Shown: positions 5,970 to 40,112, numbered from the stretch's first letter. The stretch: DNA of 64,000 nucleotides from IMGVR_UViG_3300044645_002359:124001-188000, one strand, 5' to 3'. Numbers and translations: made by a program. Notes: generated from the letters alone by a model not told the origin.

Positions 5970-8546
5970 ATGAGTACAACAAGTAGTAAAGTGTTTACAA
6001 AACGTGTTCATGTTTTCACGGCGGGGCCTCAGATTTCCGCTCAGGGGGTAGAAAGAGATTTCACCCCCGATGACCTTCAACAAGTTGTTGAATCTTACGA
6101 TCCTCAAACTCATGAGGCTCCCTTAGTAATAGGGCACTCTGGAGACAATGACAGCGTACCTTCTTTCGGGTGGGTTAAAAAATTGGTTCGGAGCGGAGAG
6201 AAATTATACGCCGATGTCGATTTTACAGACACTGCTAAAGATTTGGTGAAGGACGGTCATTATCGCAAAGTTTCGATCTCTTTCTATTCCCCGAACTCCC
6301 CAATCAACCCACATGAAGGGAAGTGGAGTGTTAGACACTTAGCGCTTCTAGGTGCCTCTCCCCCCGCTGTTAAGGGTTTAGAACCTTTTTCATTCTCCGA
6401 AGACAAGGACGGAGTTTTCAACTTCGCTTCCGTTCTTTCACCCAGCGAGATCTTCGATGAAGAACTCGGCCCAACCCTTCTTGTTGAGCGAAGCCCTTTA
6501 GAAATTCTGAAGGAAAAGCTCGAAGAAGTTCGGGGGGACATGAAGTCTTCTTTGAATGATCTTCAAGAAAACCAGGAGCAACAAACAGAAACAGACGTCG
6601 ATGAGACGCGAAACAACACCTCGGCGGATGAAAGCACCGCCCCCGAAAACCCTAACCAGCAATTTTCCGAAATGAAAAAGAAAATGGGGCGTGAAGGAGC
6701 CGAAGTCTCCGAGTCCGCTCAAAAACTCGCAAACATGGAAGATCAGTTTCCAGAAGAAAAATTTGATGAAGGTGTTTCCCGTAAAGTTACAAAGGGAGCA
6801 CATGGCCAAGAAGTCCAAGTTGTGGAAGAAGTCTTTGAAGAAGACGACGAACTTTCCGACGAACATGGTGAACTTCCGGCTGCCTTCAAGAAAAACATGG
6901 CTAAAATGAAAGCCAAGGCTAAGCATAAGGCCCATGAAAATATGGATGATGAGGAAGAGGATGTTTCCGAAGACCACCGAGAACTCCCTGCTGCTTTAAG
7001 AGCAAATGCATCCAAAATGAAGGCTAAAGCTAAGCATAAGGCCCATGATGAAGACATGGACGAAGATGAAGAAGAAGGCGATTTCGCTGAAGTCAGTGAC
7101 AAAACTGCTTCTGGTGGTAAAGCCAGTTTCGGTAAGCACGCTCAGAAAGACTCTGAAGACCCTGCGGGAAGAGCAAAGACCGCTCGCTCCTCTGACGACA
7201 GCTACGGCGACCGTCAGTCGGTTGGTCACGGCGATGAAGAAGATCGTGAAGGCGTCACTTCTGATGACGAGCAAGACCTTGACAGAGTGAACACTGCTAA
7301 GAACGGTGATCAGGATGAAGATCGCAAGAAACTTGCCAAAGTTGCTGAAGGTGAAGGTGACGAAGACTCTCGTTGGGCAGACCAACCAGAAGGTCGCCGC
7401 CGTGCGATGGAAGACGATCAGTACAACGACGGCGAATACGGTCTTCCTCGCCCCAACAAGCCCGGAATTTCTGACGGTACTGACCCACACGGTCGTGACG
7501 GTGGTCCTACTCCCGTTTCTGAAAAGTCTGAGGAAGAACCCGATTCCGAAGATATCGTAGTTCCTCTTCAAAGCACCAAAGGAAACAAGGTTTCCCGTGT
7601 ACTTCATCAAACCTCCGGACAAAAAAGAGCTCCTTTGAAAGGTGGAGAGATCGCAGACCACAGCGAAGAATCTGATGGTGTTACCCGAACTGCTAAAAAG
7701 GCAGGTGTTTCCGCAGGCAATGACCCCCACGGTCGTGATGATGGCCCAACGAACTTCCCATCTCGTTCTGAAGAAGAGCCCGATGATCTGGAAATGGCTG
7801 TGGATCTGGAGAATGCTACTCAGAGCAATAAAGTTCGTATACTTCGTCAAAAGTCCGGAGACCAGCCTTCTCTTGACCACGCCGAAGACGACGACCTTGA
7901 TGTAGAAGAGTGCGAAGCTACTGGCAAAATGACACGCAAGTACGCTGAGCGTGACACTATGACCCGCACAGGAAAGGGTTCTACCTACGGGCAAAAGCGT
8001 TCGTTTATGGACGAGGAGGATGCTGAAGACGAGGATGACGATTATTCAGAAACCGATGACTTCTGCGGAATGGGCTCAATGGGGCAGGCCAAACCCATGG
8101 GTTACCCTGTTCAAATGTTCGAAGAGTTCCAGCGTGAACTAGAGAACCTTAAGAACGAAAATTCTCGTCTCAAGAAAGAGTACCAAGAGCAACAAACTCG
8201 CTCACGCAAACAACGCATCGCCGAGTTCGTAGATAACCTCTACACCGAAGGAAAGTTGACTGATGGGATTATTCCTCAGAGAGATCTTCAAAATTACTGC
8301 GAAGGTCTTGAGTTCGGGACCCTTGAGTTCGCTGAAGGCGAATCTCCAACAACCAAGTTGTTTGGACTTCTTGATCGCTTACCTAACCTGGTCTACTTCG
8401 GAGAAGTTGTCGCTGATGGTCGCTTCGAAGCTCCCGAAGATGAGGACCTTGACCCCCACGCCCGTGCCATGAAAATGGTTGAGTCCGGAGAGTGTGATTA
8501 CGTTGAAGCCATTAAGCGTTGCATTCCTTGGGGTGGAAGAGGCTGA
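5970..8546 (+). CDS. Mu gpI-like prohead protease fused to a long acidic scaffold region
   Basis: HEAPLVIGH, FGWVKKL, YRKVSISFY, RHLALLGASPPAVKGL protease motifs; C-terminal coiled coil; internal repeats. Confidence 0.88.
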   Translation: MSTTSSKVFTKRVHVFTAGPQISAQGVERDFTPDDLQQVVESYDPQTHEAPLVIGHSGDNDSVPSFGWVKKLVRSGEKLYADVDFTDTAKDLVKDGHYRKVSISFYSPNSPINPHEGKWSVRHLALLGASPPAVKGLEPFSFSEDKDGVFNFASVLSPSEIFDEELGPTLLVERSPLEILKEKLEEVRGDMKSSLNDLQENQEQQTETDVDETRNNTSADESTAPENPNQQFSEMKKKMGREGAEVSESAQKLANMEDQFPEEKFDEGVSRKVTKGAHGQEVQVVEEVFEEDDELSDEHGELPAAFKKNMAKMKAKAKHKAHENMDDEEEDVSEDHRELPAALRANASKMKAKAKHKAHDEDMDEDEEEGDFAEVSDKTASGGKASFGKHAQKDSEDPAGRAKTARSSDDSYGDRQSVGHGDEEDREGVTSDDEQDLDRVNTAKNGDQDEDRKKLAKVAEGEGDEDSRWADQPEGRRRAMEDDQYNDGEYGLPRPNKPGISDGTDPHGRDGGPTPVSEKSEEEPDSEDIVVPLQSTKGNKVSRVLHQTSGQKRAPLKGGEIADHSEESDGVTRTAKKAGVSAGNDPHGRDDGPTNFPSRSEEEPDDLEMAVDLENATQSNKVRILRQKSGDQPSLDHAEDDDLDVEECEATGKMTRKYAERDTMTRTGKGSTYGQKRSFMDEEDAEDEDDDYSETDDFCGMGSMGQAKPMGYPVQMFEEFQRELENLKNENSRLKKEYQEQQTRSRKQRIAEFVDNLYTEGKLTDGIIPQRDLQNYCEGLEFGTLEFAEGESPTTKLFGLLDRLPNLVYFGEVVADGRFEAPEDEDLDPHARAMKMVESGECDYVEAIKRCIPWGGRG

Positions 8547-8575
8547 TTAGCCTCTATACCTTGGAGAGCGACCCT

Positions 8576-9277
8576 ATGGACCTGCTAACTTTGGTAGGAC
8601 AAGTCACGAAGAAACGGGGTGATTACTTCTCCCAAGCCGAAAACTTGGCTAGAAAAGCAAAAACGCAAGCAAAACTGAAGAGTCTTATGACAAACCAGTC
8701 TAAAGTTCTTGTCAAAGCTTTAAGAGACCGAGAAATACGCTGGGAGGAGTACTCTCGAACTTTAATTGACAAAACTCTATCAGCTGCTCTTGCCGCTGTC
8801 TATTTGGGTGCGGGGCGAGCTTCTCCAGGAAAGAAAGTTGAAAAGGCTTGGCCCACAGTTACAGGGCAAATACTTCCACCTTTGGTAGACTTTTTGAACC
8901 AAACAGAGATAGCCCTTAGTAAGGGCTCTCTCATGTTGGGAGACGACCGTTCAAACTTCTCTGAAGTTGATATGGATAGCCTTAACTACGAAGAAAAAGA
9001 AATAGCTGAGCCTGTAATGTCCTGGCTCGGTTTGGCTTCAAGGGTAGTTCGCTACCTGGCAAATCCCTCCTACTCATTTTTCAACTTAGGAGATTACTAT
9101 GTCAGACAAGAGCAGGGCTACAAGGAAATGAGAAGGGTTCCAGTCTTTGACAGAAGAACGTGTCCTGACTGCATTAATTTTGGACGAAGGGGGTGGCAGC
9201 CCTTGGGAAGTTTGCCTATGCCTGGGCAAGAATGCAGATGCTATGATCGCTGCCGCTGCTCCATTGAATACCGCTAA
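8576..9277 (+). CDS. Head morphogenesis / minor head protein (Mu gpF-like C-terminus)
   Basis: DRRTCPDC...LPMPGQECRCYDRCRCSIEY; ATG 8576 preceded by GGAG is a better start than 8519. Confidence 0.6.
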   Translation: MDLLTLVGQVTKKRGDYFSQAENLARKAKTQAKLKSLMTNQSKVLVKALRDREIRWEEYSRTLIDKTLSAALAAVYLGAGRASPGKKVEKAWPTVTGQILPPLVDFLNQTEIALSKGSLMLGDDRSNFSEVDMDSLNYEEKEIAEPVMSWLGLASRVVRYLANPSYSFFNLGDYYVRQEQGYKEMRRVPVFDRRTCPDCINFGRRGWQPLGSLPMPGQECRCYDRCRCSIEYR

Positions 9278-9976: not shown

Positions 9977-10795
9977 ATGGGTTACCGAAAGAACCTTTTT
10001 ATGGGGGCCTACATGAGACTTATGCGTAAGGGCAGAGGTAGAGGATTACTTACTAAAGGGGAGCAGGGGGTAATGCACAAACACCACATATTTCCTAAGT
10101 CTATTTTCAAGAACAAAAGGACCGTAAACAAGAAGATCGTAGGGTTAACTCCCAAGGAACACTTCCAGGCCCACCACCTGCTCTACCGTGCTTTTATCGA
10201 TAGGTATGGAACTAACCACTGTAGAACAATAAAAATGGGTCATGCCATATCTAAAATGGCCACCAAGCACGGGAAACAAGGGGTTAGGAACATATTATCG
10301 TTAAAACAGTTTGAAGAAGCGGTGAATATGCAAAGGGTCTCCATGAGAGCCCGTTACTCTGACGAAAAGGAACGGGAGAAAACTTCCTTGAAGGCTAAAG
10401 AAAGAATGGCTAGAGAAGGAGAACGGGAGAAGATATCTGAATCTCTGAAAGAATACTTTAAAGACCCTAAGCAAAGGGAGAAGCAAAAATATAACACTCT
10501 GGGAAAAAAGTGGTATAATAACGGTGAGACCCAAACCTTGTCTTGGTGTTGTCCCGGAGAGGAATGGGTGAAAGGAAGACTATCGAATGGTATAACTGGA
10601 ACATATTGGTGTAACAATGGATTTGAAAACTTAAAAGTGAGGAAAGGTAACGAACCCCCTCAGGGATTTTCATCGGGTAGACTTATGAATCTTGGGAAGT
10701 TCTACAATGACGGTAAGAAACAAATAAGAGTTGCAGAAGGTTGTAAGGTTCCCTTAGGCTTCTCTCCTGGGCGACTCAAGAGAAATAGGGTATAA
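9977..10795 (+). CDS. Free-standing HNH homing endonuclease
   Basis: HKHHIFPKS...LTPKEHFQAHHLL HNH module; three C-terminal KWYNNG/YWCNNG/KFYNDG repeats. Confidence 0.8.
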   Translation: MGYRKNLFMGAYMRLMRKGRGRGLLTKGEQGVMHKHHIFPKSIFKNKRTVNKKIVGLTPKEHFQAHHLLYRAFIDRYGTNHCRTIKMGHAISKMATKHGKQGVRNILSLKQFEEAVNMQRVSMRARYSDEKEREKTSLKAKERMAREGEREKISESLKEYFKDPKQREKQKYNTLGKKWYNNGETQTLSWCCPGEEWVKGRLSNGITGTYWCNNGFENLKVRKGNEPPQGFSSGRLMNLGKFYNDGKKQIRVAEGCKVPLGFSPGRLKRNRV

Positions 10796-10878
10796 CTCTA
10801 TTGGTTGCGACATCACGCTCACAACCAGATTGCTAAGGCAATCTTTGAAGTCAACTTTACACAAAGGAAACATCTATT

Positions 10879-13800
10879 ATGATGAATCTTCAACAGACCT
10901 ACGCCGGGGTCGATCCTATCTTGACCACGTTGGCGCAGGGCTTCATGCTCCCTTTGGTGTAGGGGAAAAGAAATTGGGTGAACTGCGGGAAAGCCTACTT
11001 TTGTTCAACGAAAGGGTCAATCCGCAGCCAAGCTTCCGGTACACCGGGAGAAGGTTCAGAGACTACCTGAGAGATATAGTTCTCTTAATAACAGGCTAGA
11101 GCGCCCAACGTTTTGTAAAGAAACGATAAGATAGTCCGACACTCTGTGTAAACAGAGAGAACATACTGTCCACCAACATCGCGAATCGATAAGGTTCCCT
11201 TCAGAGGCAACTCTGATTGAAAATCGGGTGAATTGCTGGGATACCTGACGGTTTCAGAATCTACTTTTCTGGAACACAAGGCAATCAGCAGCCAAGTTTA
11301 CTTTGGGCATCTATTGGCTACAATAGAGATAAGTAAGAAGGTTCAACGACTAGAAAGTGATCAACCCAGAAATAATCTTTCCACGAGCGCCCGACTCTCC
11401 CTTACATTACCAACGGTATGTAAAGCTTATAAACTCCCGCCCCTCTAGAGGTTTGATAAAAGAGATTGGTTTCCACATCCACCACATAGTGCCTAAGTGC
11501 ATGAAGGGTGGGAACGCTAAAGCCAATTTAGTTAAACTCACCTACAGAGAGCATTATCTATCCCATTGCTTGTTAGCTTTAGCTTTCAGTTCCGTGAAGA
11601 AACTGGGTAAAGCTATAAACTCTTTCAAAAAGTCTTCAAAGAACTCTCGGGTTTACGAAAAGGTGGCTCACCATGAGCACTCCGAAGAAACTAAAGTCAA
11701 AATTAGCAAATCCAACAAAGGAAAAGCTAGACCCCGTAAAGTTCCAATGTCTGACGAAGAGAGAACTGCTCGCGCAGAACGATGTAAAAATAGGGTTTGG
11801 AGTGAAGAGTCAAAACAAAAACTTAGAGACAAAGCCTTAAGTAATCCTACTATCCAGTTTGCAATACAAGCAGCTAATAGCCCAGATAGAGATCGAACGG
11901 GAGTTAATAACCCCCGAGCAGATAAAGAAGTTTGGGCCAACTTAGGGGTCTTGCATAGAGCCTGGACAGAAAACGGAAAGTGTGGTGCCAGAAAGCTCCA
12001 CAGGCTAACAAAATTAGGTAATACTTGGCAATCTCTAAAAACCGTTGTTAAAAAGTTTAAGGAAGATGATGATATAGTCTGAACTTACAGGAAACTGTAA
12101 GAAGTGAGTGATAAACTCTCTCACGGTAACAAGTGTTTATCGCACCTGTTGTTGACACCCCTACCAGAGCTGGGAGAATTCTCAGATTTGGTAAGGAACA
12201 ATTTGCTATAAACGACTTCCGTCGTGCTTATGGTACAAACATTCCCTACGTTCAGAGCCGTTACGACTCTGAGCCCTACGCTCTTGAACAAGAAGTTGTG
12301 GCTTGGGAATTGCCTGAAGAAGTCGAACTGGCTTCCGCCGCTTGAGAGAGCGGTTGAAAAACTGGGTGAATTGCCTGGAACCCTAACTGCGTCAGCGTCG
12401 CACAAGGGAATCAGCAGCCAAGTTTACTACGTCGAGAAATCACTATGATTCCTGTAGTAAAAAGGTTCAACGACTAGACGATGAGTTTCGACAACAATAA
12501 CTCGTCCACGAGTGCCCAGCACCCTAACAAATGGTTGAAATGGTACTACACTCTATGCGCCTCCCGAAAACACAGGGGCGTATCCAAGGAAAAGGGTTAC
12601 CACGTACATCACATTATTCCAGAATGTGACGGTGGTGACAACTCCAAAGAAAACAGAGTGAAATTAACAAACCGAGAACACTTTATCGCTCATGTCCTCC
12701 TTGCAAAAGGAACTAACTCAGTCAAACACTGGTACACAGTTAGAAGGATGTTGGGAGTGAAAGGTGGGAAAGGCGCAGTTACCTACCAACCTCGTCTATC
12801 TATTCTATCTACTTCTCTTCAAAAGACTGCTTTTGAAATTGCCCCTGGAGCTGCGCAAAAGGGAAAACCAAAGTCGGAACAAATGCGTTCAAGACTAAGT
12901 CGGACCAAGAAAGGCAAACCTCTACCTCCTGAAACCGTACGAAAAGCACACGAAGCTGTTCGAGGCAGAGTTCAAACAGAAGAGGAAAAGCAAAGGCGAA
13001 GTGAGTCTGCAAAGGCTTACTGGGCCGAGAAAAGAATGAAAGACAAGGGTGAAGATATAGTCTGACCTCCTCTAAAGAGAGAGAAGTGAGGGATAAAGAG
13101 CCCCCACGATAACACAAGTGCATCGAGAACGCTGGTGAAGGCCCTGCACAAGTAGACCTCCGCGCTTTCGAAACCCGTAACGCAATGTCCAGACTGATGA
13201 ACTCATACGAGTACACAGTTTCTCAGGCCGTTACCGTTACCGGTTCCTACAACCCATATGAACCCTGGGATACAACCCCCGGTTCACAAACTGGCCTTGG
13301 TTTTACAACCTGGACCAACTTCAACACCGCTTATGGCACCGCAACCGGCCCCGCCGCATGGTCCGCTCTCTCTGCTAACCCCATTGAGGACATTCTGACC
13401 CTGAAGCGTGCTGTTGCCAACCAGATCGGCATCCGTCCGAACTCCGCTGTTCTTGGAACCGCTGTTTTCGACCTCTTGCTGACCAACCAAGCGATCCTTG
13501 AGCGTATCAAGTATACCTCACCCGACAGCATCGATACAGATGTCATCGCTCGCTACTTCGGTCTTGAGCGTGGCCTGCGCGTAGCCGAAGGTCGTTATTT
13601 GGCCGCAGACGGTACCTTGCAACCGGTATTCCCAAGCAACGGTATCCTTCTGTTCTACAGCCCCAACGGCCCCTCTGATTCAATCATGCCTGCCGGTGGC
13701 GCTAATGCTGCGACTCCTGCGTTTAGCTACACATACCAGTTGACTGGCACACCCGCTGTCCGTCCTGAGTACTACATTCGCGAACGCCGCGTTGTACGTG

Positions 13801-13895
13801 CTGAAATCTCAATCGAACGTGTGGTTAACCTAGTTGGCCTCGGTGCAACTGGTCTTATTGGTTCTGGCGCTATGATCACCGACATCCTGTCCTGA
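10879..13895 (+). CDS. Major capsid protein, spliced: join(10879..10953,11169..11186,12136..12323,13121..13895), 351 aa
   Basis: Exons join in frame to MMNLQQTYAGVDPILTTLAQGFMLP|STNIAN|FIAPVVDTPTRAGRILRFGKE...ELPEEV|IENAGEGPAQVDLRAFETRNAMSRL...; VDPILT, GIRPN and YTYQL motifs typical of this MCP family; AAGGA RBS. Confidence 0.9.
10954..11168 (+). ncRNA. Group I intron 1 in MCP (215 nt, no ORF)
   Basis: 5' exon ends in U (TCCCT pairs with GGGGA, U.G wobble); core GGTGAACTGCGGGAA / AATCCGCAGCCAAG / GTTCAGAGACTA / AAGATAGTCC; terminal G; P10 TTGGTG pairs with exon 2 CACCAA. Confidence 0.9.
11187..12135 (+). mobile_element. Group I intron 2 in MCP (949 nt) carrying an HNH endonuclease
   Basis: P1 GAAT/GTTC; core GGTGAATTGCTGGGA / AATCAGCAGCCAAG / GTTCAACGACTAG / GATATAGTCTG; ends AACAAGTG; P10 CGATAA pairs with exon 3 TTATCG. 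Confidence 0.9.
11357..12082 (+). CDS. Intron-encoded HNH homing endonuclease with NUMOD3-like motif
   Basis: HIHHIVPKCMKGGNAKANLVKLTYREHYLSH; HSEETKVKISKSNKGK; stop lies in intron S element (GATATAGTCTGA); start uncertain. Confidence 0.85.
   Translation: MINPEIIFPRAPDSPLHYQRYVKLINSRPSRGLIKEIGFHIHHIVPKCMKGGNAKANLVKLTYREHYLSHCLLALAFSSVKKLGKAINSFKKSSKNSRVYEKVAHHEHSEETKVKISKSNKGKARPRKVPMSDEERTARAERCKNRVWSEESKQKLRDKALSNPTIQFAIQAANSPDRDRTGVNNPRADKEVWANLGVLHRAWTENGKCGARKLHRLTKLGNTWQSLKTVVKKFKEDDDIV
12324..13120 (+). mobile_element. Group I intron 3 in MCP (797 nt) carrying an HNH endonuclease
   Basis: P1 GAAGT/GCTTC with U.G; core GGTGAATTGCCTGGAA / AATCAGCAGCCAAG / GTTCAACGACTAG / AAGATATAGTCTG; ends ACAAGTG; splits Val codon GT|C and restores frame. 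Confidence 0.9.
12481..13065 (+). CDS. Intron-encoded HNH homing endonuclease with NUMOD3-like repeats
   Basis: HVHHIIPECDGGDNSKENRVKLTNREHFIAH; KGKPKSEQMRSRLS repeats; ends DIV* in S element. Confidence 0.85.
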   Translation: MSFDNNNSSTSAQHPNKWLKWYYTLCASRKHRGVSKEKGYHVHHIIPECDGGDNSKENRVKLTNREHFIAHVLLAKGTNSVKHWYTVRRMLGVKGGKGAVTYQPRLSILSTSLQKTAFEIAPGAAQKGKPKSEQMRSRLSRTKKGKPLPPETVRKAHEAVRGRVQTEEEKQRRSESAKAYWAEKRMKDKGEDIV

Positions 13896-21907: not shown

Positions 21908-22210
21908 ATGACAACGAGAAAGAAAAAAGTGTTTTCCGACATTGAGAGTCTAGAACAAGGCTTAACAGAAGAGATTCTTGAAGAAAGTTTTTCATTACCC
22001 TCCTTAGAAGATTTCTCGGAGACCCCTGTAGAAAAGGAAGAGGAGCCAGAACCTATTGAAAAGGTGAAGGAAGTAACCGAAGAAGTGAAAGCTGAGGTTA
22101 TTGAACAAGAACCCGAAGGGCAACCTGTTCAAGTGAGACCGAGACCGGCTGCTCCAGCTAAACGGATCCCTTCCAAAAACACTCCGAAACTTTCTGCTAA
22201 ACTTAGGTAA
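21908..22210 (+). CDS. Small acidic hypothetical protein
   Basis: 100 aa Glu/Pro-rich ORF after a GGGTAAA motif. Confidence 0.6.
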   Translation: MTTRKKKVFSDIESLEQGLTEEILEESFSLPSLEDFSETPVEKEEEPEPIEKVKEVTEEVKAEVIEQEPEGQPVQVRPRPAAPAKRIPSKNTPKLSAKLR

Positions 22211-31401: not shown

Positions 31402-32038
31402 ATGCAAGGTTCATTCTCTGAAGACTCCCTTAAAGTTTTCAACAAGCTTGCTTCAGCAACTCAGGAGTTAAATTACAGCGAATCTGGAACAGATTCGTAT
31501 GACTTCACCCGTTGTGTAAGGCCGAATGGCACTGCCTATGGTACCAAGGGTAAATGTAGAAAAGGTTCGGAGGAAGAAAGACAAACTTCAGAACTGCAAA
31601 AAAAATTCCCCCGAAGTAGAGGCATTGGCTAAAAAACTCATAAAGTTTCAAAAGAAAGAAAATTTCTTTAAAAGGCTGCAGGACCTTAGACCCGGTGTTT
31701 TGAGTGAACATTTTATGACTGCAAAAAATTTAGATTTAGTAATGTATTTTCTTGAAAAAGAGAAAGCTGCTCTAGAAGCTGAGAAAACAAGGATAAGGAA
31801 AGGCGAGATTGAAACTCCAAAACCAAAAGGTACTAAATCCTCTGAAGCAGAAATTGTAGCCAAAAAGTTAAATACAAGGTTGAAACGAGAATCTAGTTAT
31901 ACAGATTTCTTAGCAAAAGGCCGTGGATCTCTTGATAAAGAGCACGGTGACGAAGTAGCCCTATATTGGCTTACGAAGTTTAAGGAGGAAAGAGAAGTCC
32001 TGGAAGCCAGGAAAGCAAAATCAGAGGCTGAAAAATAA
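31402..32038 (+). CDS. Leader-bearing late protein, frameshifted at A8 run (31598-31605); ~211 aa if fused
   Basis: ORF 31402..31632 (MQGSFSEDSL...DFTRCVRPNGTAYGTKGKCRKG) and ORF ending 32038 are joined by a +1 shift in CAAAAAAAATT; C-terminal part has two ~65 aa repeats. Confidence 0.55.
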
Positions 32039-34187: not shown

Positions 34188-34189
34188 TT

Positions 34190-34555
34190 ATGACAAGTAC
34201 GAAAGATAAAATTGAGGGGCAATACCGCATACCCTGTGGCCCGATGGACATCGCCGCCGATGCAATTTGCCGCCGCTCATTGCGCGACCGTTTCGACAAG
34301 TTGCTCGATAGGCTGACTCTCGAAGTTAACCCTCACCTTCCCACCCCCGGAAAACTACCAAAAGACCTCGAAGTTTCTGATGACGGAAAAATCGTTGCGA
34401 AAAAAGAAGAGTCAGAGGAGGATCGCAGGAGAAAGCTCATTGACGAAGGAAAGTTTCGCGCAGAGGTTCACGCGGAAATCAAAAAGTACCGTGAGGACCT
34501 CCAAGGAAATGGGAAGATGCTACAGGATATCTCTGGTAAGTATGAGTCGATCTGA
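34190..34555 (+). CDS. Hypothetical protein
   Basis: ATG at 34190 right after upstream stop; 121 aa. Confidence 0.55.
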   Translation: MTSTKDKIEGQYRIPCGPMDIAADAICRRSLRDRFDKLLDRLTLEVNPHLPTPGKLPKDLEVSDDGKIVAKKEESEEDRRRKLIDEGKFRAEVHAEIKKYREDLQGNGKMLQDISGKYESI

Positions 34556-34596
34556 GTCTTTCTAAGGGTAAAGTTACTCAGTCTACAAACTATACA

Positions 34597-35184: not shown

Positions 35185-35191
35185 GGTAACA

Positions 35192-35503
35192 ATGGCAACG
35201 TTCAATGAAAGAGCTTTTCTCATACGTGCATTAGCTGGAATTTTCGTAGTTCAATTTATTACGGTAGGTTACCAAACTTGGTCCTGCCAGTCTTCTGCCA
35301 CCCAGAATAAAGACTCAACTCAGGTCACTCTTATTTGCAACAATGCCACAAATTCTTTTAACGAGACCGGAAAACTTGCTCTAACAACGATTCTTGCTCT
35401 CCTGGTTCCTTCCTCGGGTCAAAACGTTTCTGAAATTCTTGATTCGGTGAGAGGAAACCGCAAACGTAAAGGTGAGGACGAAAATCAAGAGGGTAAAGTT
35501 TAG
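35192..35503 (+). CDS. Small membrane protein (two hydrophobic segments), possibly lysis-related
   Basis: FLIRALAGIFVVQFITVGY and LALTTILALLV; GAGG RBS before ATG 35192; charged C-terminus. Confidence 0.5.
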   Translation: MATFNERAFLIRALAGIFVVQFITVGYQTWSCQSSATQNKDSTQVTLICNNATNSFNETGKLALTTILALLVPSSGQNVSEILDSVRGNRKRKGEDENQEGKV

Positions 35504-35521
35504 GATCACTGTAGTGTCTTT

Positions 35522-36496
35522 ATGTACGGAGCTAATTTAGATTTTTCTTCTGTGTCTTTGCCAGGGGTCGGGGGTTCTCTCAATGCAGCTACCGCCATAT
35601 CCTCCGACAAACTTCAGGAAATGAATCGCACTGGCAAAAAATGGCGCACCGATAAAGACGGTAACATGTCTTTCCATAACGAAGCCATTTTGGACGCCAA
35701 TAAAGCAAGTCGCGAACGAAGGGAAAACTTGGTAAATCGTGACCGAGACGCCCATGCAGACGGTCAAGCGGCGATGAAAGAAATTTTCGGCCGAAAGAAA
35801 GCCCGGATGGAAGCCTTTCGAGAAATAAAAAGAAACGAATACAACTTTGCCGACGACACGGAACTAATGTCAATGCCACAACCTTTCGGTGAGGGTTGTT
35901 CTACAAGTTGCAAAAGCCCTGGAAAGTGTTCTTGCTCTTCCTGTAAAGCAAAAGCGAAAGCTGACTCAGAATTTCGTGAATGGACCACAGAAAAGCGCAA
36001 GAAACTTCAAACCGGTGAGGCGAAAGGGGAATTCGCCGGCCCGGGAATGTCGTTCCCGATCGCAAGTCCAGAGGACGTTTCAGCCGCTTGGTCCTCTGTA
36101 GGACGGGCAGCGAACCCCCGTAAAATCATGGCAGAAATCATTCGCATTGCTAAGAAGTATGGCTGGGAATCTGGCCTACCTCAGACGGTTAAAGATCGCA
36201 TGGAAGAGGGTGAGTCCGGTCTACCGTCCCCTGACTTTCGTGAATGGCCTTCAACAAAGAGGGAAGCTATGAAAAAAGGCGACATTGTCGGACAATTCGC
36301 TGGCCCAGGAATGTCCTTTCCCATCGCAAGTCCACAAGATGTTTCGGCAGCTTGGTCTTCCGTTGGCCGAGCTTCAAATCCTCGCGAAACAATGGCTAAA
36401 ATTATTGCAATCGCTAAGAAAAACGGCTGGGAGTCTGGACTCCCTCAGACAGTTAAAGACCGCCTGAACGCAGGTCAGTCAGGATTACCGAGGTAA
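35522..36496 (+). CDS. Hypothetical protein with tandem 88 aa domain duplication
   Basis: FREW...FAGPGMSFPIASPxDVSAAWSSVGRA...GWESGLPQTVKDR repeated with 264 nt period (35969, 36233). Confidence 0.75.
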   Translation: MYGANLDFSSVSLPGVGGSLNAATAISSDKLQEMNRTGKKWRTDKDGNMSFHNEAILDANKASRERRENLVNRDRDAHADGQAAMKEIFGRKKARMEAFREIKRNEYNFADDTELMSMPQPFGEGCSTSCKSPGKCSCSSCKAKAKADSEFREWTTEKRKKLQTGEAKGEFAGPGMSFPIASPEDVSAAWSSVGRAANPRKIMAEIIRIAKKYGWESGLPQTVKDRMEEGESGLPSPDFREWPSTKREAMKKGDIVGQFAGPGMSFPIASPQDVSAAWSSVGRASNPRETMAKIIAIAKKNGWESGLPQTVKDRLNAGQSGLPR

Positions 36497-36500
36497 GAAA

Positions 36501-36872
36501 ATGGGTTTAGTTGAAATTCCTCTAATCATTGCCGGTTGGTTTCTCACAGCAGGAATAGCAGGAGTAGGCGGAACTTTTGCCATTCAGGGTCGGAACAATA
36601 AGAGATTAGACACACTAAGGAGTAACTCTGATAAGAAAATTGAAAGACTTATCGAGGAAAATGACAAGAGAATTAACACTTTGATTGCTGCCAATACCCT
36701 CCAAAATGAGAACGTATTAAATCATATTAAGAACGTAGAAAAGGCTCTTAATGACATGAGAGCCGAATTACCGGAAAAGTACACTCTCAAGTCCGACCAC
36801 TTAAGATTGGTAGACAAAGTAGAAGAGTTGTCGATACAGTTCTACAGACATAGAGAGAAAGAAGGTGAGTGA
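36501..36872 (+). CDS. Membrane-anchored coiled-coil protein
   Basis: N-terminal hydrophobic segment followed by heptad-rich region. Confidence 0.55.
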   Translation: MGLVEIPLIIAGWFLTAGIAGVGGTFAIQGRNNKRLDTLRSNSDKKIERLIEENDKRINTLIAANTLQNENVLNHIKNVEKALNDMRAELPEKYTLKSDHLRLVDKVEELSIQFYRHREKEGE

Positions 36873-37377
36873 GAGCTACGACTGGCACCGGCTGGAAGGT
36901 TTGGGTTTTGACCTGAACTACATTGAAAAGGCACTTCCTGCCTCATACAAAAAAGGTCTAACTGCACGAGAGCAAGGTGTCGCTAAGCGTGAAGCGAAAG
37001 ATACTATGGAGAAGGCCAGCAGCAAGAAAACCTCGGCGAAAGAATTGTATAAAGACTGGGAGTCGGATAAGAGTTTCCGGAATAGGGAAAAAGAGATACC
37101 GAAGTCCCCAGCCACAGAAGCATTTGAGCGCGACTTTGCTGAGTCTTCCCCTTCCGACACAGCCCTTAAGAACAAGTCAAAAAAGTCCGGCATCCCTATG
37201 CCTATACTGAGACAAGTGTTTAAGAGAGGAATGGCAGCTTGGAGGTCTGGTCACCGTCCTGGTGTTGCACCGCAGCAATGGGCTCAGGCAAGAGTGTCAA
37301 GTTTCATCACGGGAGTGGGAGGAGCACGGAAGGCTGATGCCGACCTTTGGAAAAAAGCTAAGGGTAAAAAACATTAG
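36865..37377 (+). CDS. Conserved viral protein (DUF5824-like C-terminal domain)
   Basis: LKNKSKKSGIPMPILRQVFKRGMAAWRSGHRPGVAPQQWAQARVSSF, recognised from algal viruses and cyanophages. Confidence 0.6.
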   Translation: MSESYDWHRLEGLGFDLNYIEKALPASYKKGLTAREQGVAKREAKDTMEKASSKKTSAKELYKDWESDKSFRNREKEIPKSPATEAFERDFAESSPSDTALKNKSKKSGIPMPILRQVFKRGMAAWRSGHRPGVAPQQWAQARVSSFITGVGGARKADADLWKKAKGKKH

Positions 37378-37393
37378 TTTAGAACTTAGAGAA

Positions 37394-37762
37394 ATGAGTA
37401 ACTTGGGATCTTTTTCTCCGGAAGCTTACAGAGCTTACAAATATGGGGTTGAAAACCCGAGTAATTTCATGGGAATTGCTCCTGCATTCGAGGCAGAACC
37501 AGGGAGAAACCCTGATTCTTTTTCCATGGGCGAAGATGACGAGACTGACGAAGACGATTACGATCCAGATTACGGGAACGAGGACTTTGAGCCGAACGGG
37601 GGCATGGCTATGACCCAACTTCGCTCTATGCAAGATAACATCGAGACTATTCTTGAAATGATCGGTCCCTACTCAAACTTAGACCCCTGGATGGCTGCAA
37701 AGTTGGCCGAGGCTGAGCATGGTATGACAGCGATCGCCGACGCTTTACAATACAGAGATTGA
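37394..37762 (+). CDS. Hypothetical protein with G-S-F leader
   Basis: MSNLGSFSPEAYRAY; ATG 37394 lies just downstream of a GGGTAAA motif. Confidence 0.6.
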   Translation: MSNLGSFSPEAYRAYKYGVENPSNFMGIAPAFEAEPGRNPDSFSMGEDDETDEDDYDPDYGNEDFEPNGGMAMTQLRSMQDNIETILEMIGPYSNLDPWMAAKLAEAEHGMTAIADALQYRD

Positions 37763-37767
37763 TCAAA

Positions 37768-38127
37768 ATGTGGGGATCTTTCTTACAATCTGCTTATGAT
37801 TCTTTCCTGGAAGCGGCTATAGAAAAGTACGTTGAGAAAGTTGACAAAAATTCACTAGATTGCAATGACCCCCACGCCACTCCGAGTCACCCTACGAAAT
37901 CTCACATAGTTAAAGCGTGCTATCCTGGAGCCCCGAAAGGTGGCAAGCTGATTCGATTCGGTCAACAAGGTGTGAAAGGGTCGCCAAAGAAAGAAGGGGA
38001 ATCGGAGGCTTATAAAGCCAGACGAGAGGCTTTCAAGGCAAGACATGCTGCTAATATTGCGAAGGGTAAGTCTTCAGCTGCCTACTGGAGTAATCTGGAA
38101 GAATGGGCGGAAGACATTAAGTGGTAG
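37768..38127 (+). CDS. Conserved phage protein with G-S-F leader
   Basis: MWGSFLQSAYDSF; KSHIVKAC...KLIRFGQQG...RREAFKARH...SAAYWS domain seen in many aquatic phages. Confidence 0.6.
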   Translation: MWGSFLQSAYDSFLEAAIEKYVEKVDKNSLDCNDPHATPSHPTKSHIVKACYPGAPKGGKLIRFGQQGVKGSPKKEGESEAYKARREAFKARHAANIAKGKSSAAYWSNLEEWAEDIKW

Positions 38128-38159
38128 GGTATAATTCAGGTTGTAATCAACCTTAAACA

Positions 38160-38858
38160 ATGAAACACAACCACAGAATACTGCCCGGCCACATGGGAGG
38201 CGAGTACGTAGAAGGCAATGTTATACCTGTACAAGTAACTCAGTGTGACACTAACACTGCCAACCATGTAATGTGGCACTTTGCCAACTGGTGCCTTTAT
38301 GGTAAAGAAGAAGATCGAGCAGCCTATAAAGGTTTATCAGGTTGTTATAGTAAAGAAAAAATTATCGAGGAGAGGTTGAGACTAGCTGGTCAAATGCATG
38401 TCGATTCCGGCCACATTCAAGAAATAGGCAGGATTAACGGTAAGAGAGCCATGTCTCCGGGTGGATGGTTATACATGAACAGAATAGAATATGGGCGTTT
38501 AGGCTACAAATCAGGGATAGGAAAGTCGGAAAACAGGTTAACAGGGGAACAACTATCTGAGTTGGCTAAAAAGACTTGGAGAGAAGGGAAAGGTTTGGCA
38601 GCTTTAACTCCTGAGCAAAGAAGCGAAATAGGAAAAAGAGCTGGCAAAATTAGTGGACAAGTGAACAGAGAAAATAAAACAGGGGTTTGCGGAATTCCTC
38701 CAGAAGAACACTCCAAAAGAATGTCCGAAACGAACCGTCAAAAATGGCAATGTCCCGTGTGTGGTTTAATTGGTAATGCCAAGCAAATAAACGCGCATAT
38801 GGCAGCTGAACATAATCTCGATAAAAAAGCCAAAATTAAGTGTAACTCTAACCACTAG
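38160..38858 (+). CDS. Free-standing HNH-like endonuclease with C-terminal C2H2 zinc finger
   Basis: HNHRILPGHMGGEYVEGNVI...NHVMWH; EQRSEIGKRAG-type repeats; CPVCG...HMAAEH. Confidence 0.65.
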   Translation: MKHNHRILPGHMGGEYVEGNVIPVQVTQCDTNTANHVMWHFANWCLYGKEEDRAAYKGLSGCYSKEKIIEERLRLAGQMHVDSGHIQEIGRINGKRAMSPGGWLYMNRIEYGRLGYKSGIGKSENRLTGEQLSELAKKTWREGKGLAALTPEQRSEIGKRAGKISGQVNRENKTGVCGIPPEEHSKRMSETNRQKWQCPVCGLIGNAKQINAHMAAEHNLDKKAKIKCNSNH

Positions 38859-38891
38859 GAGGGTAAAGTTCACTGACAGCAATCTCTAAAC

Positions 38892-39515
38892 ATGCAAGGA
38901 AATTTCGGTATCCCAAATATAGACCACCTGGTAGAAGGAGTTCACTACCACATTGTAGATTGGGACTTTGCAGACCCTGCTCCTGCAGCCCCGACACCTA
39001 CCCCTCCTCACAATCCGGGTGAATCGTGCCCACCAAATCAAAAAATGGTCTTCGGGGTATGCCGCCGCGTGAATGCTAGCGGAGAACAACAAGTAGGAGA
39101 CGACACTGACCAGGAAAGATCCCTAAAAGACCAAGCTAAGAAAGAAGGCTCGGCTTTTGAGAATAACAAGGCAATGAGTGCCGGTGGTAAGAAGTACGGT
39201 TGGGCTATGAAAGGTGGAAAACCGGTAATGGTGGCTTGGGGATCTGTAGCAGGTGAGAAAAAAGTTGGGCTCAAGAAGCCTGCTTCTGCGGCTCCACCTA
39301 CCGCGCTCACCGGTTCCCCCGCTCCACGCGCTGGAGCATCCCCTGCACCCGCTAGAGCTGGTTCCCCAGCTCCAACTACAGCTCCAACAGCCCCAATATC
39401 AGCTACTGATAGAGCTGCTTATAACGCAGGAGGGGGCAATGCCGCAGCGCAAAGAGGCACGGGGCGAACTACTGAGCAAGTTATAGCTCAAGGTAAGAAA
39501 ATTTGGATAGACTAG
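38892..39515 (+). CDS. Pro/Ala-rich hypothetical protein with G-N-F leader
   Basis: MQGNFG; CPPNQKMVFGVCR motif; AGASPAP repeats. Confidence 0.6.
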   Translation: MQGNFGIPNIDHLVEGVHYHIVDWDFADPAPAAPTPTPPHNPGESCPPNQKMVFGVCRRVNASGEQQVGDDTDQERSLKDQAKKEGSAFENNKAMSAGGKKYGWAMKGGKPVMVAWGSVAGEKKVGLKKPASAAPPTALTGSPAPRAGASPAPARAGSPAPTTAPTAPISATDRAAYNAGGGNAAAQRGTGRTTEQVIAQGKKIWID

Positions 39516-39590
39516 ATCAGGGTAAGGGTAGGCGCTGATACGAATAAAGGGTAAGTTACAATTAACAGACATACTCTCCCCACTTGGCAA

Positions 39591-40112
39591 ATGTATAACC
39601 CAAGACCCTTAGACTTAGATACATTCTCAGAACAAGAGTTGCAAATCGAAGGGTACACTCATATGCCCACGGATTATTACAGGAACACCGTCATGGAGCC
39701 TGAAACCGTCTCCACATTAAGACCGAGTTTCGGAGAGTATGAAGCCATGGGAGAGAGGCACGAGGAAATCTCTTCTAAGATTGACTTACTCAATCAAGCA
39801 ATGAAACTTTCCCGTCAGAGGGGGGCTTTTCAAGAGTTGCAGAATCAAATGGCTGCCGTCAAGAAACTTGTAAAAGAGCGTGAAGAAATTGATGCAAAAA
39901 TGGCCACTGTTGACCTTGCCCGAAAGAAAACAGATGACCACAACATTGCTGCCGGTATGGAAACTTCTTACACAGAGCAACTGGATTCGGTAAACTCTCG
40001 CATCAACCGTTTACAAAAGCTTCTTCAGGACTTCAGTGAGTCCATGGGAGAAGGTGAGTTTGACTTTACTCGTAACGGTCGTAAAGGCAAAGCCTGTGAG
40101 GAGACACAATGA
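39591..40112 (+). CDS. Coiled-coil hypothetical protein
   Basis: 173 aa; several F/Y-x-E motifs; ends in degenerate KGKAC motif. Confidence 0.6.
   Translation: MYNPRPLDLDTFSEQELQIEGYTHMPTDYYRNTVMEPETVSTLRPSFGEYEAMGERHEEISSKIDLLNQAMKLSRQRGAFQELQNQMAAVKKLVKEREEIDAKMATVDLARKKTDDHNIAAGMETSYTEQLDSVNSRINRLQKLLQDFSESMGEGEFDFTRNGRKGKACEETQ

What the first reader, a model, noticed from the sequence alone, without database searches (positions are those of the whole stretch)
5970..40112. Putative prohead-protease cleavage code [FYH]-x-E marking domain boundaries
Seen: the protease/scaffold is studded with aromatic/His-small-Glu motifs (FSE twice, HGE, HRE, FAE twice, HSE, HAE, YAE, YSE, FGE). The same motif occurs in 8576 (NFSE), 21908 (DFSE), 31402 (NYSE), 35522 (FRE twice), 36865 (NYIE, DFAE), 37768 (KYVE) and 39591 (TFSE, SFGE, SYTE, DFSE). 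Duplicated units start exactly at this motif: the scaffold 37 aa repeats follow HGE/HRE, both 88 aa repeats of 35522 follow FRE, and the DUF5824-like domain follows DFAE. Established: T4 and phiKZ prohead proteases cut after Glu in short consensus sites. Inference: these proteins are polyproteins processed inside the prohead.
Basis: inference. Interest (0 to 1): 0.72.

Follow-up and report, generated by a model that had tools for sequence, protein, structure and literature searches.

The report
Aromatic-x-Glu motif in phage scaffold
The head-assembly protease/scaffold protein of this 201-kb cyanophage, and its whole BcepMu-type protein family, is packed with a conserved Phe/Tyr/His-x-Glu motif that most likely marks where the protease cuts the scaffold, but the motif is no more frequent than chance in the phage's other proteins.

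Summary
In the 858-aa Mu gpI-like protease/scaffold (5970-8546), [FYH]-x-E occurs 21 times against 8 expected. This is the strongest excess among the genome's 297 ORFs. The refined form [DENQS][FYH][ASGC]E occurs 9 times against 0.7 expected.

The excess is a family trait. It is seen in all 120 close homologues, in S-CBWM1, S-TIM5, Nodularia phage and BcepMu gp32, and in 130 of 134 cluster representatives. It is specific for Glu (not Asp), for spacing +2 and for aromatic P3 (not aliphatic or Trp). It also holds in lineage-specific inserts. E. coli Mu gpI lacks it.

As a positive control, the same statistic recovers the known [LI]-x-E code in T4 gp22, at 2.8-fold.

Outside the scaffold there is no proteome-wide excess (98 observed, 97.6 expected). 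Only 39591 and 35522 are nominally enriched. The major capsid protein has no sites, and the DUF5824 claim is wrong.

Best reading: these are cleavage sites after Glu for scaffold degradation and self-processing by an assemblin-fold Ser protease. This would be a new specificity variant of a known mechanism. It is inferred, not shown. The wider idea of processed polyproteins is not supported.

The parts
5970..8546 (+). Gene for the 858-aa prohead protease fused to a long acidic scaffold (Mu gpI / BcepMu gp32 type).
   Evidence: Pfam PF10123 Mu-like_Pro at 26.9 bits (cut-off 25.2); PHROG 976 'head maturation protease' at E 4e-64. Lies between Portal_Mu and the capsid gene. 120 homologues at 44-92% identity.
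5970..6359 (+). Protease core, aa 1-130. Candidate catalytic residues are His56 (6135-6137), Ser102 (6273-6275) and His123 (6336-6338).
   Evidence: H56, S102 and H123 are invariant in 80 diverse family members. AF2 model has pLDDT 83.5. Top Foldseek hits are herpesvirus assemblin proteases (prob 0.99, E 1.7e-3); T4 gp21 (5JBL) also hits, at rank 28.
6360..6404 (+). Flexible linker after the protease core (aa 131-145), ending in the invariant Phe-Ser-Glu 142-144 (6393-6401). Candidate self-cleavage site.
   Evidence: pLDDT is below 50 for residues 131-145 in an otherwise confident model. F142 and E144 are present in 121 of 121 sequences. The family consensus at this position is 'F x E'.
6393..8507 (+). 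The 21 [FYH]-x-E sites. First bases: 6393, 6453, 6663, 6747, 6762, 6834, 6864, 6975, 7044, 7083, 7659, 7878, 7941, 8043, 8118, 8181, 8241, 8295, 8328, 8397, 8499.
   Evidence: Coordinates. 21 observed against 8.05 expected. Most site columns are conserved, with F/Y/H interchange while Glu is kept; for example one column reads Y70/F42/H9 and another H55/F38/Y24.
6852..7076 (+). Tandem 37-aa repeat (aa 295-331 / 332-369). Each unit is an acidic stretch, then [DE]-H-x-E, then a basic helix beginning LPAA.
   Evidence: Self-alignment score 127. Helices predicted at 304-319 and 341-358.
7458..7895 (+). Second repeat pair (aa 497-569 / 577-642). Each unit ends in Asp-His-[Ser/Ala]-Glu.
   Evidence: Self-alignment score 154.
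8109..8546 (+). Conserved helical C-terminal domain (aa 714-858), presumed capsid-binding end of the scaffold. It carries 7 conserved sites.
   Evidence: This is the only confidently modelled part of the full-length AF2 model. [FY]-x-E is 4.4-fold enriched in the last 110 residues of 126 family representatives.
4419..5960 (+). Portal protein (Portal_Mu) with a variable acidic C-terminal tail. No conserved motif site.
   Evidence: PF06074 at E 5e-70. Alignment of tails from 8 orthologues.
8519..9277 (+). Minor head protein resembling Mu F / SPP1 gp7 in its Cys-rich C-terminus. NFSE (8957-8965) and NYEE (8987-8995) lie in the variable linker between its two conserved parts.
   Evidence: phrog_24776. 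At the NFSE column, 5 of 8 orthologues have [FY]-x-E, 2 have F-x-D and 1 has nothing. The likeness to Mu F rests on my own knowledge of that family.
10879..13895 (+). Major capsid protein gene (Phage_cap_E type), split by three group I introns. The spliced product of about 352 aa has no [FYH]-x-E.
   Evidence: Rfam RF00028 matched three times. Exons located by tblastn with the S-CBWM1 capsid protein. Junction reading. 0 sites against 1.76 expected.
35522..36496 (+). 324-aa protein with two 86-aa DUF6582-like units, each starting with [ED]FREW. Five sites in all.
   Evidence: In 121 sequences, [FY]REW and HNE are kept in all 121, but the whole protein is conserved.
39591..40112 (+). 173-aa coiled-coil protein with 6 sites.
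   Evidence: 6 observed against 1.8 expected. In 37 sequences, SF[GSK]E is kept in 36 and SY[STA]E in 37, and the C-terminal [FY]SE in 19. Relatives carry a different N-terminal FSE/YSE inside an insertion. No orthologue in S-CBWM1.
36865..37377 (+). DUF5824 protein. The DFAE site lies inside the domain, not before it.
   Evidence: PF19141 matches residues 68-156. DFAE is residues 90-93; its Phe-Ala-Glu is at nt 37135-37143.
21908..22210 (+). 100-aa acidic protein with a single DFSE.
   Evidence: 1 observed against 0.62 expected, which is chance level.
31402..31632 (+). 76-aa ORF carrying an N-terminal module: MQGSFSE, then NYSE, then YDFTRC...GKC. It is out of frame with the overlapping 31526-32038 ORF.
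   Evidence: Paralogous modules elsewhere in the genome and in S-CBWM1.
37759..38127 (+). 122-aa protein (phrog_7595) with SFLE and KYVE.
   Evidence: 2 observed against 1.03 expected, which is chance level.

Best explanation
The window belongs to a 201-kb cyanophage related to S-CBWM1 and S-TIM5. Gene 5970-8546 encodes a Mu gpI / BcepMu gp32-type protein. It has an N-terminal assemblin-fold serine protease (His56/Ser102/His123), a long and mostly disordered acidic scaffold, and a helical C-terminal domain.

The motif is best written [D/N/S/Q/E]-[F/Y/H]-[A/S/G/C]-E, often followed by Gly. I take it to be the recognition site of this protease. The peptide would bind as an extended strand, with the P3 aromatic and the P1 Glu side chains pointing the same way into the S3 and S1 pockets, and would be cut after Glu.

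Once the prohead shell has formed, the protease would free itself at the invariant FSE144 in the flexible linker. It would then cut the scaffold at about 20 sites (median spacing 27 residues across the family) into peptides small enough to leave the capsid.

What is shown: the motif is real, strongly enriched, conserved, specific for Glu and for the +2 spacing, and regained in newly inserted scaffold sequence. It is a hallmark of the BcepMu-type branch of the family but not of E. coli Mu gpI.

What is inferred: that it is a cleavage site.

What is not supported: that it forms a general code marking other head or late proteins. At most a few single sites (Mu F-like 8519, 39591, 35522) may also be used.
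For: - Enrichment in the window protein: 21 against 8.05. Refined motif 9 against 0.71.
- Replication in relatives: all 120 homologues have a ratio of at least 1.97, median 2.8. S-CBWM1 13/6.6, S-TIM5 17/7.6, Nodularia phage 10/5.3, and BcepMu gp32 8/2.8 with all eight P2 residues being A, S or G.
- 134 representatives of 50%-identity clusters, region after the protease domain: [FY].E 852 against 263. Asp 0.90, Gln 0.74. Spacing +1 gives 0.65, +3 gives 0.69, +4 gives 0.87. LIVM 0.99, Trp 0.37. 130 of 134 proteins have observed above expected.
- The variable middle region alone gives 2.73-fold. P2 prefers A/S/C, P4 prefers N/D/S/Q, P1' prefers G.
- [FY][ASGC]E is 488 against 60. Shuffling within 10-residue windows gives 271 +/- 15 against 832 observed.
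- Lineage-specific inserts absent from the window protein: 68 against 24.8, Asp 1.0.
- F/Y/H interchange at fixed columns while Glu is kept.
- Positive control: T4 [LI].E gives gp22 16/5.7, gp21 7/2.6, gp68 5/2.0 and gp23 8/4.0, with no excess in gp17-20.
- Protease identity.
- Glu at P1 is documented for T4 gp21 (10.64898/2026.03.04.709575), SPN3US gp245 AXE (PMC10052503) and the phage P1 capsid protein, cut between E120 and S121 (PMC9024508).
Against: - No cleavage product has been observed for any member of this protease family in anything I could find.
- Complex prediction of the protease domain with a motif peptide gave no answer.
- The site at the end of the protease domain is F-S-D, not F-x-E, in BcepMu.
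- A 192-residue stretch of the window scaffold (aa 375-566) has no site.
- Seven sites lie in the folded C-terminal helical domain, where a structural or binding role is equally possible.
- E. coli Mu gpI, the namesake of the family, shows no enrichment: 1 against 1.5.
- The capsid protein carries no site, unlike in T4 and phiKZ.
Confidence: 0.6

Rival explanations
1. The motif is a short linear binding motif, not a cleavage site. Repeated aromatic-x-Glu 'stickers' would bind the inner face of the capsid protein, the portal or other scaffold copies by strand addition, giving multivalent scaffold-shell contacts. The protease would cut elsewhere, or not at defined sites.
For: The strongest enrichment (4.4-fold) is in the conserved helical C-terminal domain, which in other phages is the capsid-binding end of scaffolds. 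The statistics show selection on the motif but not what recognises it. The GenBank record JQ245707.2 labels the S-TIM5 homologue a virion structural protein, so part of the protein may stay bound.
Against: The i/i+2 spacing, strict Glu over Asp, small P2 and small P1' are typical of protease subsites. The motif has the same architecture as three documented prohead protease codes. An invariant copy sits in the disordered linker right after the protease core. A density of one site per roughly 27 residues through disordered acidic sequence, kept even in new inserts, fits fragmentation better than binding.
Confidence: 0.25
2. The excess has no function. It would be a by-product of acidic, aromatic-poor composition, of internal repeats and of shared ancestry among homologues.
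For: Some sites are duplicated with their repeats (HGE/HRE in the scaffold; DH[AS]E runs in S-TIM5). Homologues are not independent samples. In a single protein, the individual F(+2)E pair (P 0.004) would not survive an unbiased scan of about 1,400 residue-pair classes.
Against: Local shuffling within 10- to 25-residue windows leaves the excess intact. The excess is absent for Asp, Gln, Lys and Arg, for other spacings and for aliphatic or Trp P3. It recurs in unalignable middle regions of proteins below 50% identity and in lineage-specific inserts. 130 of 134 representatives show it.
Confidence: 0.05
3. One reading: the motif is a general cleavage code, and many late-cluster proteins (8519, 21908, 31402, 35522, 36865, 37759, 39591) are polyproteins packaged in the prohead and cut at domain boundaries.
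For: - 39591 and 35522 rank 2nd and 3rd in the genome, and their sites are conserved.
- The cluster 30503-39591 gives 12 against 5.1 for [FYH][SAGR]E, P 0.007.
- The NFSE linker site of 8519 is kept in 5 of 8 orthologues.
- 32222 is the orthologue of a protein annotated as an S-CBWM1 virion structural protein.
- A shared N-terminal leader, MQGSFSE followed by [FY]SE, recalls the T4 capsid-targeting sequence.
Against: - There is no proteome-wide excess: 98 against 97.6, and 25 against 23.7.
- The cluster signal disappears without 35522 and 39591: 5 against 4.2.
- The proteins were picked because they carry the motif.
- DFAE lies inside the DUF5824 domain.
- The gp023 sites are not conserved in 32222.
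- The cluster holds PhoH and a kinase.
- The leader Glu is replaced by Ala or Val in paralogues, and the same module sits on a nucleotidyltransferase-like enzyme.
- The capsid protein and portal lack conserved sites.
Confidence: 0.1

Closest known systems
T4 prohead protease gp21 with scaffold core gp22 (cleavage after [L/I]-x-E)
   Same: Assemblin-superfamily serine protease. Short site with hydrophobic P3, any or small P2, and Glu at P1. The scaffold carries many sites and is cut to small peptides, and the protease cuts itself. The same enrichment statistic gives 2.8-fold in gp22 and 2.6-fold here.
   Different: P3 here is aromatic or His rather than Leu/Ile; [LIVM]-x-E is not enriched (0.99). 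Protease and scaffold form one polypeptide. The sequence family is PF10123, not the gp21 family. The capsid protein has no site, whereas gp23 is cut. Cleavage here is not demonstrated.
phiKZ gp175 and SPN3US gp245 prohead proteases (cleavage after [S/A/G]-x-E or A-x-E)
   Same: Glu at P1 within a three-residue motif, with multiple motif copies in propeptides (PMC10052503).
   Different: In those phages many head and ejection proteins are cut (the phiKZ details rest on my own knowledge). Here only the scaffold shows an excess. The P3 class differs.
Mu gpI/gpZ and BcepMu gp32/gp33 (protease with a nested scaffold)
   Same: Same Pfam family, same gene position between portal and capsid protein, and the same N-terminal protease with C-terminal scaffold layout. 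BcepMu gp32 shares the motif at 8 against 2.8.
   Different: The window protein is 2.3 times longer, with a repeat-rich acidic middle part. His is frequent at P3 in the cyanophage clade. E. coli Mu gpI itself lacks the motif. I found no published cleavage specificity for this family.
Herpesvirus assemblin (KSHV, HSV, EBV and PRV proteases)
   Same: Best structural matches to the protease-domain model. The conserved residues follow the same His...Ser...His order; the triad comparison rests on my own knowledge.
   Different: Assemblin cuts Ala/Ser bonds (my own knowledge), not after Glu. Foldseek TM-score is only about 0.42.
Phage P1 Pro protease and capsid protein gp23 (cut between E120 and S121)
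   Same: Another prohead maturation cut after Glu (PMC9024508).
   Different: HK97 gp4-like protease, a single mapped site in a capsid propeptide, and no motif defined.

Membership tests
Mu gpI-like prohead protease/scaffold (Pfam PF10123; PHROG 976) | Profile match above the curated threshold | tested here: met
   PF10123 at 26.9 bits against a cut-off of 25.2; phrog_976 at E 4.4e-64.
Mu gpI-like prohead protease/scaffold (Pfam PF10123; PHROG 976) | Gene lies between a Mu-type portal and the major capsid protein | tested here: met
   Portal_Mu at 4419-5960 and the capsid gene at 10879-13895. The order is the same in S-CBWM1, BcepMu and Mu.
Mu gpI-like prohead protease/scaffold (Pfam PF10123; PHROG 976) | Conserved catalytic-type residues and assemblin-like fold | tested here: met
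   H56, S102 and H123 are invariant in 80 members. Foldseek top 21 hits are herpesvirus proteases, and T4 gp21 is also hit. TM-score is about 0.4, so support for the fold is moderate.
Mu gpI-like prohead protease/scaffold (Pfam PF10123; PHROG 976) | Proteolytic activity and scaffold function | not testable with these tools
   Needs biochemistry or genetics.
Glu-specific prohead protease cleavage code (T4 [LI]xE; phiKZ/SPN3US [SAG]xE) | Three-residue motif ending in Glu, enriched in scaffold or core proteins and in the protease itself | tested here: met
   21 against 8 here; 852 against 263 across the family; specific for Glu and for the +2 spacing. The T4 control behaves the same way.
Glu-specific prohead protease cleavage code (T4 [LI]xE; phiKZ/SPN3US [SAG]xE) | Mature protein ends mapped after the motif Glu | not testable with these tools
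   No proteomic or N-terminal data for this family were found. The S-TIM5 paper is not held.
Glu-specific prohead protease cleavage code (T4 [LI]xE; phiKZ/SPN3US [SAG]xE) | Major capsid protein carries an N-terminal propeptide ending in the motif | tested here: not met
   The spliced capsid protein has no [FYH]-x-E, and the S-TIM5 capsid protein has none. The start of Mu T was confirmed by amino-acid sequencing, according to the GenBank note.
Glu-specific prohead protease cleavage code (T4 [LI]xE; phiKZ/SPN3US [SAG]xE) | Motif marks several other head proteins | tested here: inconclusive
   No proteome-wide excess. Partial conservation in 8519. Conserved sites in 39591 and 35522, whose location in the particle is unknown.
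Packaged internal proteins with a cleavable targeting leader (T4 IP/CTS type) | Shared short N-terminal leader ending in the cleavage motif on otherwise unrelated proteins | tested here: inconclusive
   The MQGSFSE leader occurs on 3 paralogues and MESGTFSE in S-CBWM1. Other copies read SFSA, SFSV or SISE. The shared region extends about 55 aa and also sits on a nucleotidyltransferase-like enzyme.
Packaged internal proteins with a cleavable targeting leader (T4 IP/CTS type) | Presence of the proteins in virions | not testable with these tools
   Only indirect: 32222 is the orthologue of a protein annotated as a virion structural protein in S-CBWM1.

The most novel reading that the evidence does not exclude
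The BcepMu-type branch of the Mu gpI family (thousands of proteins in Mu-like prophages and large cyanophages) would be a previously uncharacterised class of Glu-P1 / aromatic-P3 prohead proteases. In addition, in this cyanophage clade the code would extend beyond the scaffold to packaged cargo: 39591, 35522, the Mu F-like 8519, and proteins carrying the MQGSFSE...[FY]SE leader. That leader would act like the T4 capsid-targeting sequence.
Probability: 0.12. Interest if true: 0.75.

Novelty: new variant of a known kind. Interest (0 to 1): 0.55.

Why it matters
In the literature I could search, no cleavage specificity is described for Mu gpI / BcepMu gp32-type head proteases. The family is very large: 5,783 cluster representatives at E <= 0.001. 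It spans transposable phages of Pseudomonas and Burkholderia and large cyanophages.

A sequence-derived site, [F/Y/H]-[A/S/G/C]-E followed by the cut, gives a concrete prediction that can be tested with peptides. It would allow:
- prediction of mature protein ends and scaffold fragments;
- design of cleavable cargo fusions for these capsids;
- a search for host sensors that detect this protease, as CBASS does for T4 gp21.

It would also show that Glu at P1 with a hydrophobic P3 recurs in a third sequence family of assemblin-fold proteases.

The result also limits the original claim. The motif is not a genome-wide domain-boundary code.

Tried and rejected
- Complex prediction of the protease domain with scaffold residues 222-245 gave no answer, score 0.00.
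- The full-length AF2 model was poor (mean pLDDT 50.8). I used it only for order/disorder and helices.
- The search for related loci with 39591 found one 95%-identical relative only.
- The megablast search of the phage collection found nothing.
- Literature searches for Mu-like, BcepMu or JBD30 cleavage sites found no mapped site.
- The S-TIM5 PNAS paper is not held.
- S-CBWM1 gp023 ('virion structural protein') looked enriched (8 against 2.4). Only one of its sites is conserved in the window orthologue 32222, so I treat it as chance.
- Portal C-terminal tails show no conserved [FYH]-x-E.
- E. coli Mu proteins H, F, I and T show no enrichment, so the motif is not universal in PF10123.
- A profile search of PDB sequences with the protease alignment gave only spurious hits.
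- Pfam finds nothing for the MQGSFSE/DFTRC module.
- Amphipathic-helix periodicity as an explanation is rejected, because aliphatic P3 and the +3/+4 spacings are not enriched.

Full report
CONTEXT

The window is bases 124001-188000 of a single 201,260-bp contig. Nearly all genes lie on the + strand.

Profile searches identify these genes:
- tail sheath, 32-3688
- Mu-type portal, 4419-5960
- an 858-aa Mu gpI-like 'head maturation protease', 5970-8546
- a minor head protein, 8519-9277
- a Phage_cap_E-type major capsid protein, with its C-terminal part at 13185-13895
- tail tube and baseplate genes
- two terminase-like genes
- PhoH, then a run of small proteins of unknown function (31.4-40.1 kb), then a kinase-like protein at 40109

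The nearest isolates by tblastn are Synechococcus phage S-CBWM1 (about 50% identity in the protease) and the S-TIM5 group. More distant matches are Nodularia phages and Mu-like phages such as BcepMu.

CHECKING THE OBSERVATION

In the protease/scaffold there are 21 [FYH]-x-E. Whole-protein shuffling expects 8.05 +/- 2.6, and shuffling within 25-residue windows expects 7.95. Of 29 Phe, 10 have Glu at +2, as do 6 of 16 Tyr and 5 of 21 His. The Glu frequency is 12%.

Across my 297 ORF calls for the whole genome:
- The scaffold is the top-ranked protein (Poisson P 1e-4).
- 39591 (6 against 1.8) and 35522 (5 against 1.3) follow at P 0.011 each.
- The genome-wide ratio is 1.04.

A caution applies to the single protein. 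An unbiased scan of all residue pairs at spacings 1-4 puts F(+2)E second, at P 0.004. On its own that would not survive multiple testing. Independent sequences were therefore needed.

REPLICATION IN OTHER SEQUENCES

Close homologues. 120 homologues at 44-92% identity all have an observed/expected ratio of at least 1.97, with a median of 2.8. Summed over the family, Y(+2)E and F(+2)E have by far the largest absolute excess of any residue pair.

Conservation of sites. In the alignment most window sites sit in conserved columns. In those columns Phe, Tyr and His replace one another while Glu stays. Examples are Y70/F42/H9, H55/F38/Y24 and F55/Y47. The site logo is P4 D/E/Q/N, P3 F/Y/H, P2 A/S, P1 E and P1' G.

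Divergent members:
- S-CBWM1: 13 against 6.6
- S-TIM5: 17 against 7.6
- Nodularia phage: 10 against 5.3
- BcepMu gp32: 8 against 2.8, with all eight sites having A, S or G at P2

E. coli Mu gpI does not show the excess: 1 against 1.5.

Cluster representatives. An exhaustive search with the protease domain found 5,783 cluster representatives at E <= 0.001. The best 150 were returned. I analysed the 134 of these that are at least 280 aa long, in the region after the protease domain:

| Measure | Observed/expected or ratio |
|---|---|
| [FY]-x-E | 852 / 263 (3.25) |
| H-x-E | 1.4 |
| [FY]-x-D | 0.90 |
| [FY]-x-Q | 0.74 |
| [FY]-x-K | 0.80 |
| [FYH] to E, spacing +1 | 0.65 |
| [FYH] to E, spacing +3 | 0.69 |
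| [FYH] to E, spacing +4 | 0.87 |
| [LIVM]-x-E | 0.99 |
| W-x-E | 0.37 |

130 of the 134 proteins have observed above expected.

Further checks on these representatives:
- The variable middle part alone gives 2.73-fold and the last 110 residues give 4.4-fold.
- [FY][ASGC]E is 488 against 60. Ordinary-length gpI-like proteins (300-449 aa) give 3.8-fold, with 85 of 87 above expectation. The median distance between sites is 27 residues.
- Shuffling within 10-residue windows gives 271 +/- 15 against 832 observed.
- Lineage-specific inserts that the window protein lacks give 68 against 24.8, with Asp at 1.0.

The motif is therefore a selected and highly specific feature of this branch of the family. 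It is not a composition effect.

CALIBRATION ON T4

I ran the same statistic on T4 with the established [L/I]-x-E code (code documented).

| T4 protein | [LI]-x-E observed / expected |
|---|---|
| gp22 (scaffold) | 16 / 5.7, P 3e-4 |
| gp21 (protease) | 7 / 2.6 |
| gp68 | 5 / 2.0 |
| gp23 (capsid protein) | 8 / 4.0 |
| gp17-gp20 | no excess |

[FYH]-x-E is not enriched in any of these T4 proteins. A known cleavage code thus leaves the same kind and size of footprint in a scaffold as the one seen here.

THE PROTEASE

In an alignment of 80 diverse protease domains, G19, H56, S102, H123 and P132 are invariant.

The AF2 model of residues 1-160 is good (pLDDT 83.5). The exception is residues 131-145, which have pLDDT below 50 and end in the invariant FSE144.

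Foldseek's first 21 PDB matches are herpesvirus assemblin proteases (probability up to 0.99-1.0, best E 1.7e-3, TM about 0.42). T4 gp21 (5JBL) appears further down, at rank 28.

The full-length model is confident only for the C-terminal helical domain, residues 714-855. Residues 205-713 are mostly below pLDDT 50.

OTHER PROTEINS

| Group | Observed / expected |
|---|---|
| Scaffold | 11 / 2.24 |
| All other 296 ORFs | 98 / 97.6 |
| Tail, baseplate, fibres | 7 / 11.4 |
| Left arm (early and DNA-metabolism genes) | 58 / 62.2 |
| Sheath, portal, 8519, 9376, capsid C-terminal part | 3 / 4.0 |
| Cluster 30503-39591 | 12 / 5.1, P 0.007 |
| Same cluster without 35522 and 39591 | 5 / 4.2 |

The refined four-residue motif gives 9 against 0.71 in the scaffold and 25 against 23.7 everywhere else.

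Capsid protein. I assembled it approximately from four exons. It has no site, against 1.76 expected.

Portal. The C-terminal tails of eight orthologues have no conserved site.

8519. The NFSE column, at the start of a variable acidic linker, holds [FY]-x-E in 5 of 8 orthologues, F-x-D in 2 and nothing in 1.

39591. Two sites are nearly invariant (36 and 37 of 37 sequences). A C-terminal [FY]SE is kept in 19. Relatives that lack the window's N-terminal TFSE carry FSE or YSE inside a different N-terminal insertion.

35522. [FY]REW at the start of the DUF6582-like unit and HNE are kept in 121 of 121 sequences. The whole protein is well conserved, so this says little.

S-CBWM1. The two most enriched ORFs in its proteome are the protease and gp023, which is annotated as a virion structural protein and is the orthologue of window 32222. 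Only one of gp023's eight sites is shared with 32222.

36865. DFAE lies inside the DUF5824 match, residues 68-156.

The cluster is syntenic with S-CBWM1, where the order is terminase, PhoH, small ORFs, then kinase. Nothing places these proteins in the head.

REPEATS

These were checked by self-alignment.
- Scaffold aa 295-331 / 332-369: the motif is four residues inside each unit and just before a predicted basic helix.
- Scaffold aa 497-569 / 577-642: each unit ends in DH[SA]E.
- 35522 aa 150-235 / 238-323: each unit starts with [ED]FREW.

Because the motif is part of the repeated unit in each case, the repeat copies are not independent evidence.

INTERPRETATION

The i/i+2 geometry, strict Glu, small P2 and P1', and an invariant copy in the flexible linker behind the protease core all fit a peptide bound as an extended strand in a protease cleft.

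The architecture equals that of the T4, phiKZ/SPN3US and P1 examples of cutting after Glu.

I therefore favour cleavage sites for scaffold fragmentation and self-release, at confidence 0.6. The main rival is a non-proteolytic binding motif (0.25).

A few single sites remain open.

I found no report of a cleavage specificity for this protease family. If the inference is correct, this is a new specificity variant of a known mechanism.

Noticed in passing
window 10862-13083 (capsid gene 10879-13895): The major capsid protein gene is interrupted by three group I introns (Rfam RF00028: 10862-11158, 11177-12101, 12320-13083). Between the first two lies an apparent 18-nt micro-exon (about 11169-11186, encoding STNIAN). 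Two introns carry homing-endonuclease-like ORFs (11357-12082 with NUMOD3; 12481-13065 with HNH). A similar free-standing ORF (9977-10795) lies just upstream. Exon borders are approximate.
   Followed up: partly
window 31402-31632; genome C1 27053, 52127, 45736, 10424, about 11348; L001 12432 (S-CBWM1 gp165); L007 26678: An N-terminal module of about 55 aa recurs on at least six genes of this phage and on S-CBWM1 gp165 and its NMN adenylyltransferase. It reads: leader MQGSFSE, a second [FY]SE, then [YF]DFTRC-x-R-x-[DN]G-x-x-[YF]G-x-x-G-x-C-[RT]KG. Pfam finds nothing. The copy at 31402-31632 is out of frame with the overlapping ORF 31526-32038, which suggests a frameshift, a pseudogene or a mis-called start.
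   Followed up: partly
window 26948-28711 and 28730-30127: Two tandem terminase-large-subunit-like genes share a very similar N-terminus. The second is shorter and matches Terminase_6C only weakly (E 9e-4, below the cut-off).
   Followed up: no
window 32222-33847 (aa ~65-180) and 40109-41389 (aa 2-88): A Cys-rich N-terminal region (C-x-x-GK-x-C-x-x-x-C-I-x-x-N-x-x-C) is shared by 32222 and the kinase-like 40109. 32222 is the orthologue of a protein annotated as an S-CBWM1 virion structural protein. BLAST also links both proteins to the N-termini of S-CBWM1 kinases.
   Followed up: no
window 5700-5960 (portal C-terminus): The portal tails of eight relatives share a short D-L-[YF]-x-S-[IV]-F-G motif, followed by an acidic extension of very variable length.
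   Followed up: no
window 55058-56098: A 346-aa protein is built of about seven copies of a roughly 45-aa repeat containing ITAYPWSSSGFGTKYANPATLP. It lies among the tail-fibre genes.
   Followed up: no
window 34597-35184: A 195-aa protein is extremely rich in Asp and Glu (runs of DDDDEEED) and has no family match.
   Followed up: no
window 40109-40112: The stop codon of 39591-40112 overlaps the start of the kinase-like gene 40109-41389 (ATGA), which suggests coupled translation. The C-terminus of 39591 (EFDFTRNGRKGKAC) resembles the DFTRC module.
   Followed up: no
L003 7938-9764 (S-TIM5 homologue): The S-TIM5 homologue of the protease/scaffold is labelled 'virion structural protein and packaging' in GenBank JQ245707.2. 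Part of it may therefore remain in virions. The source paper could not be read.
   Followed up: partly
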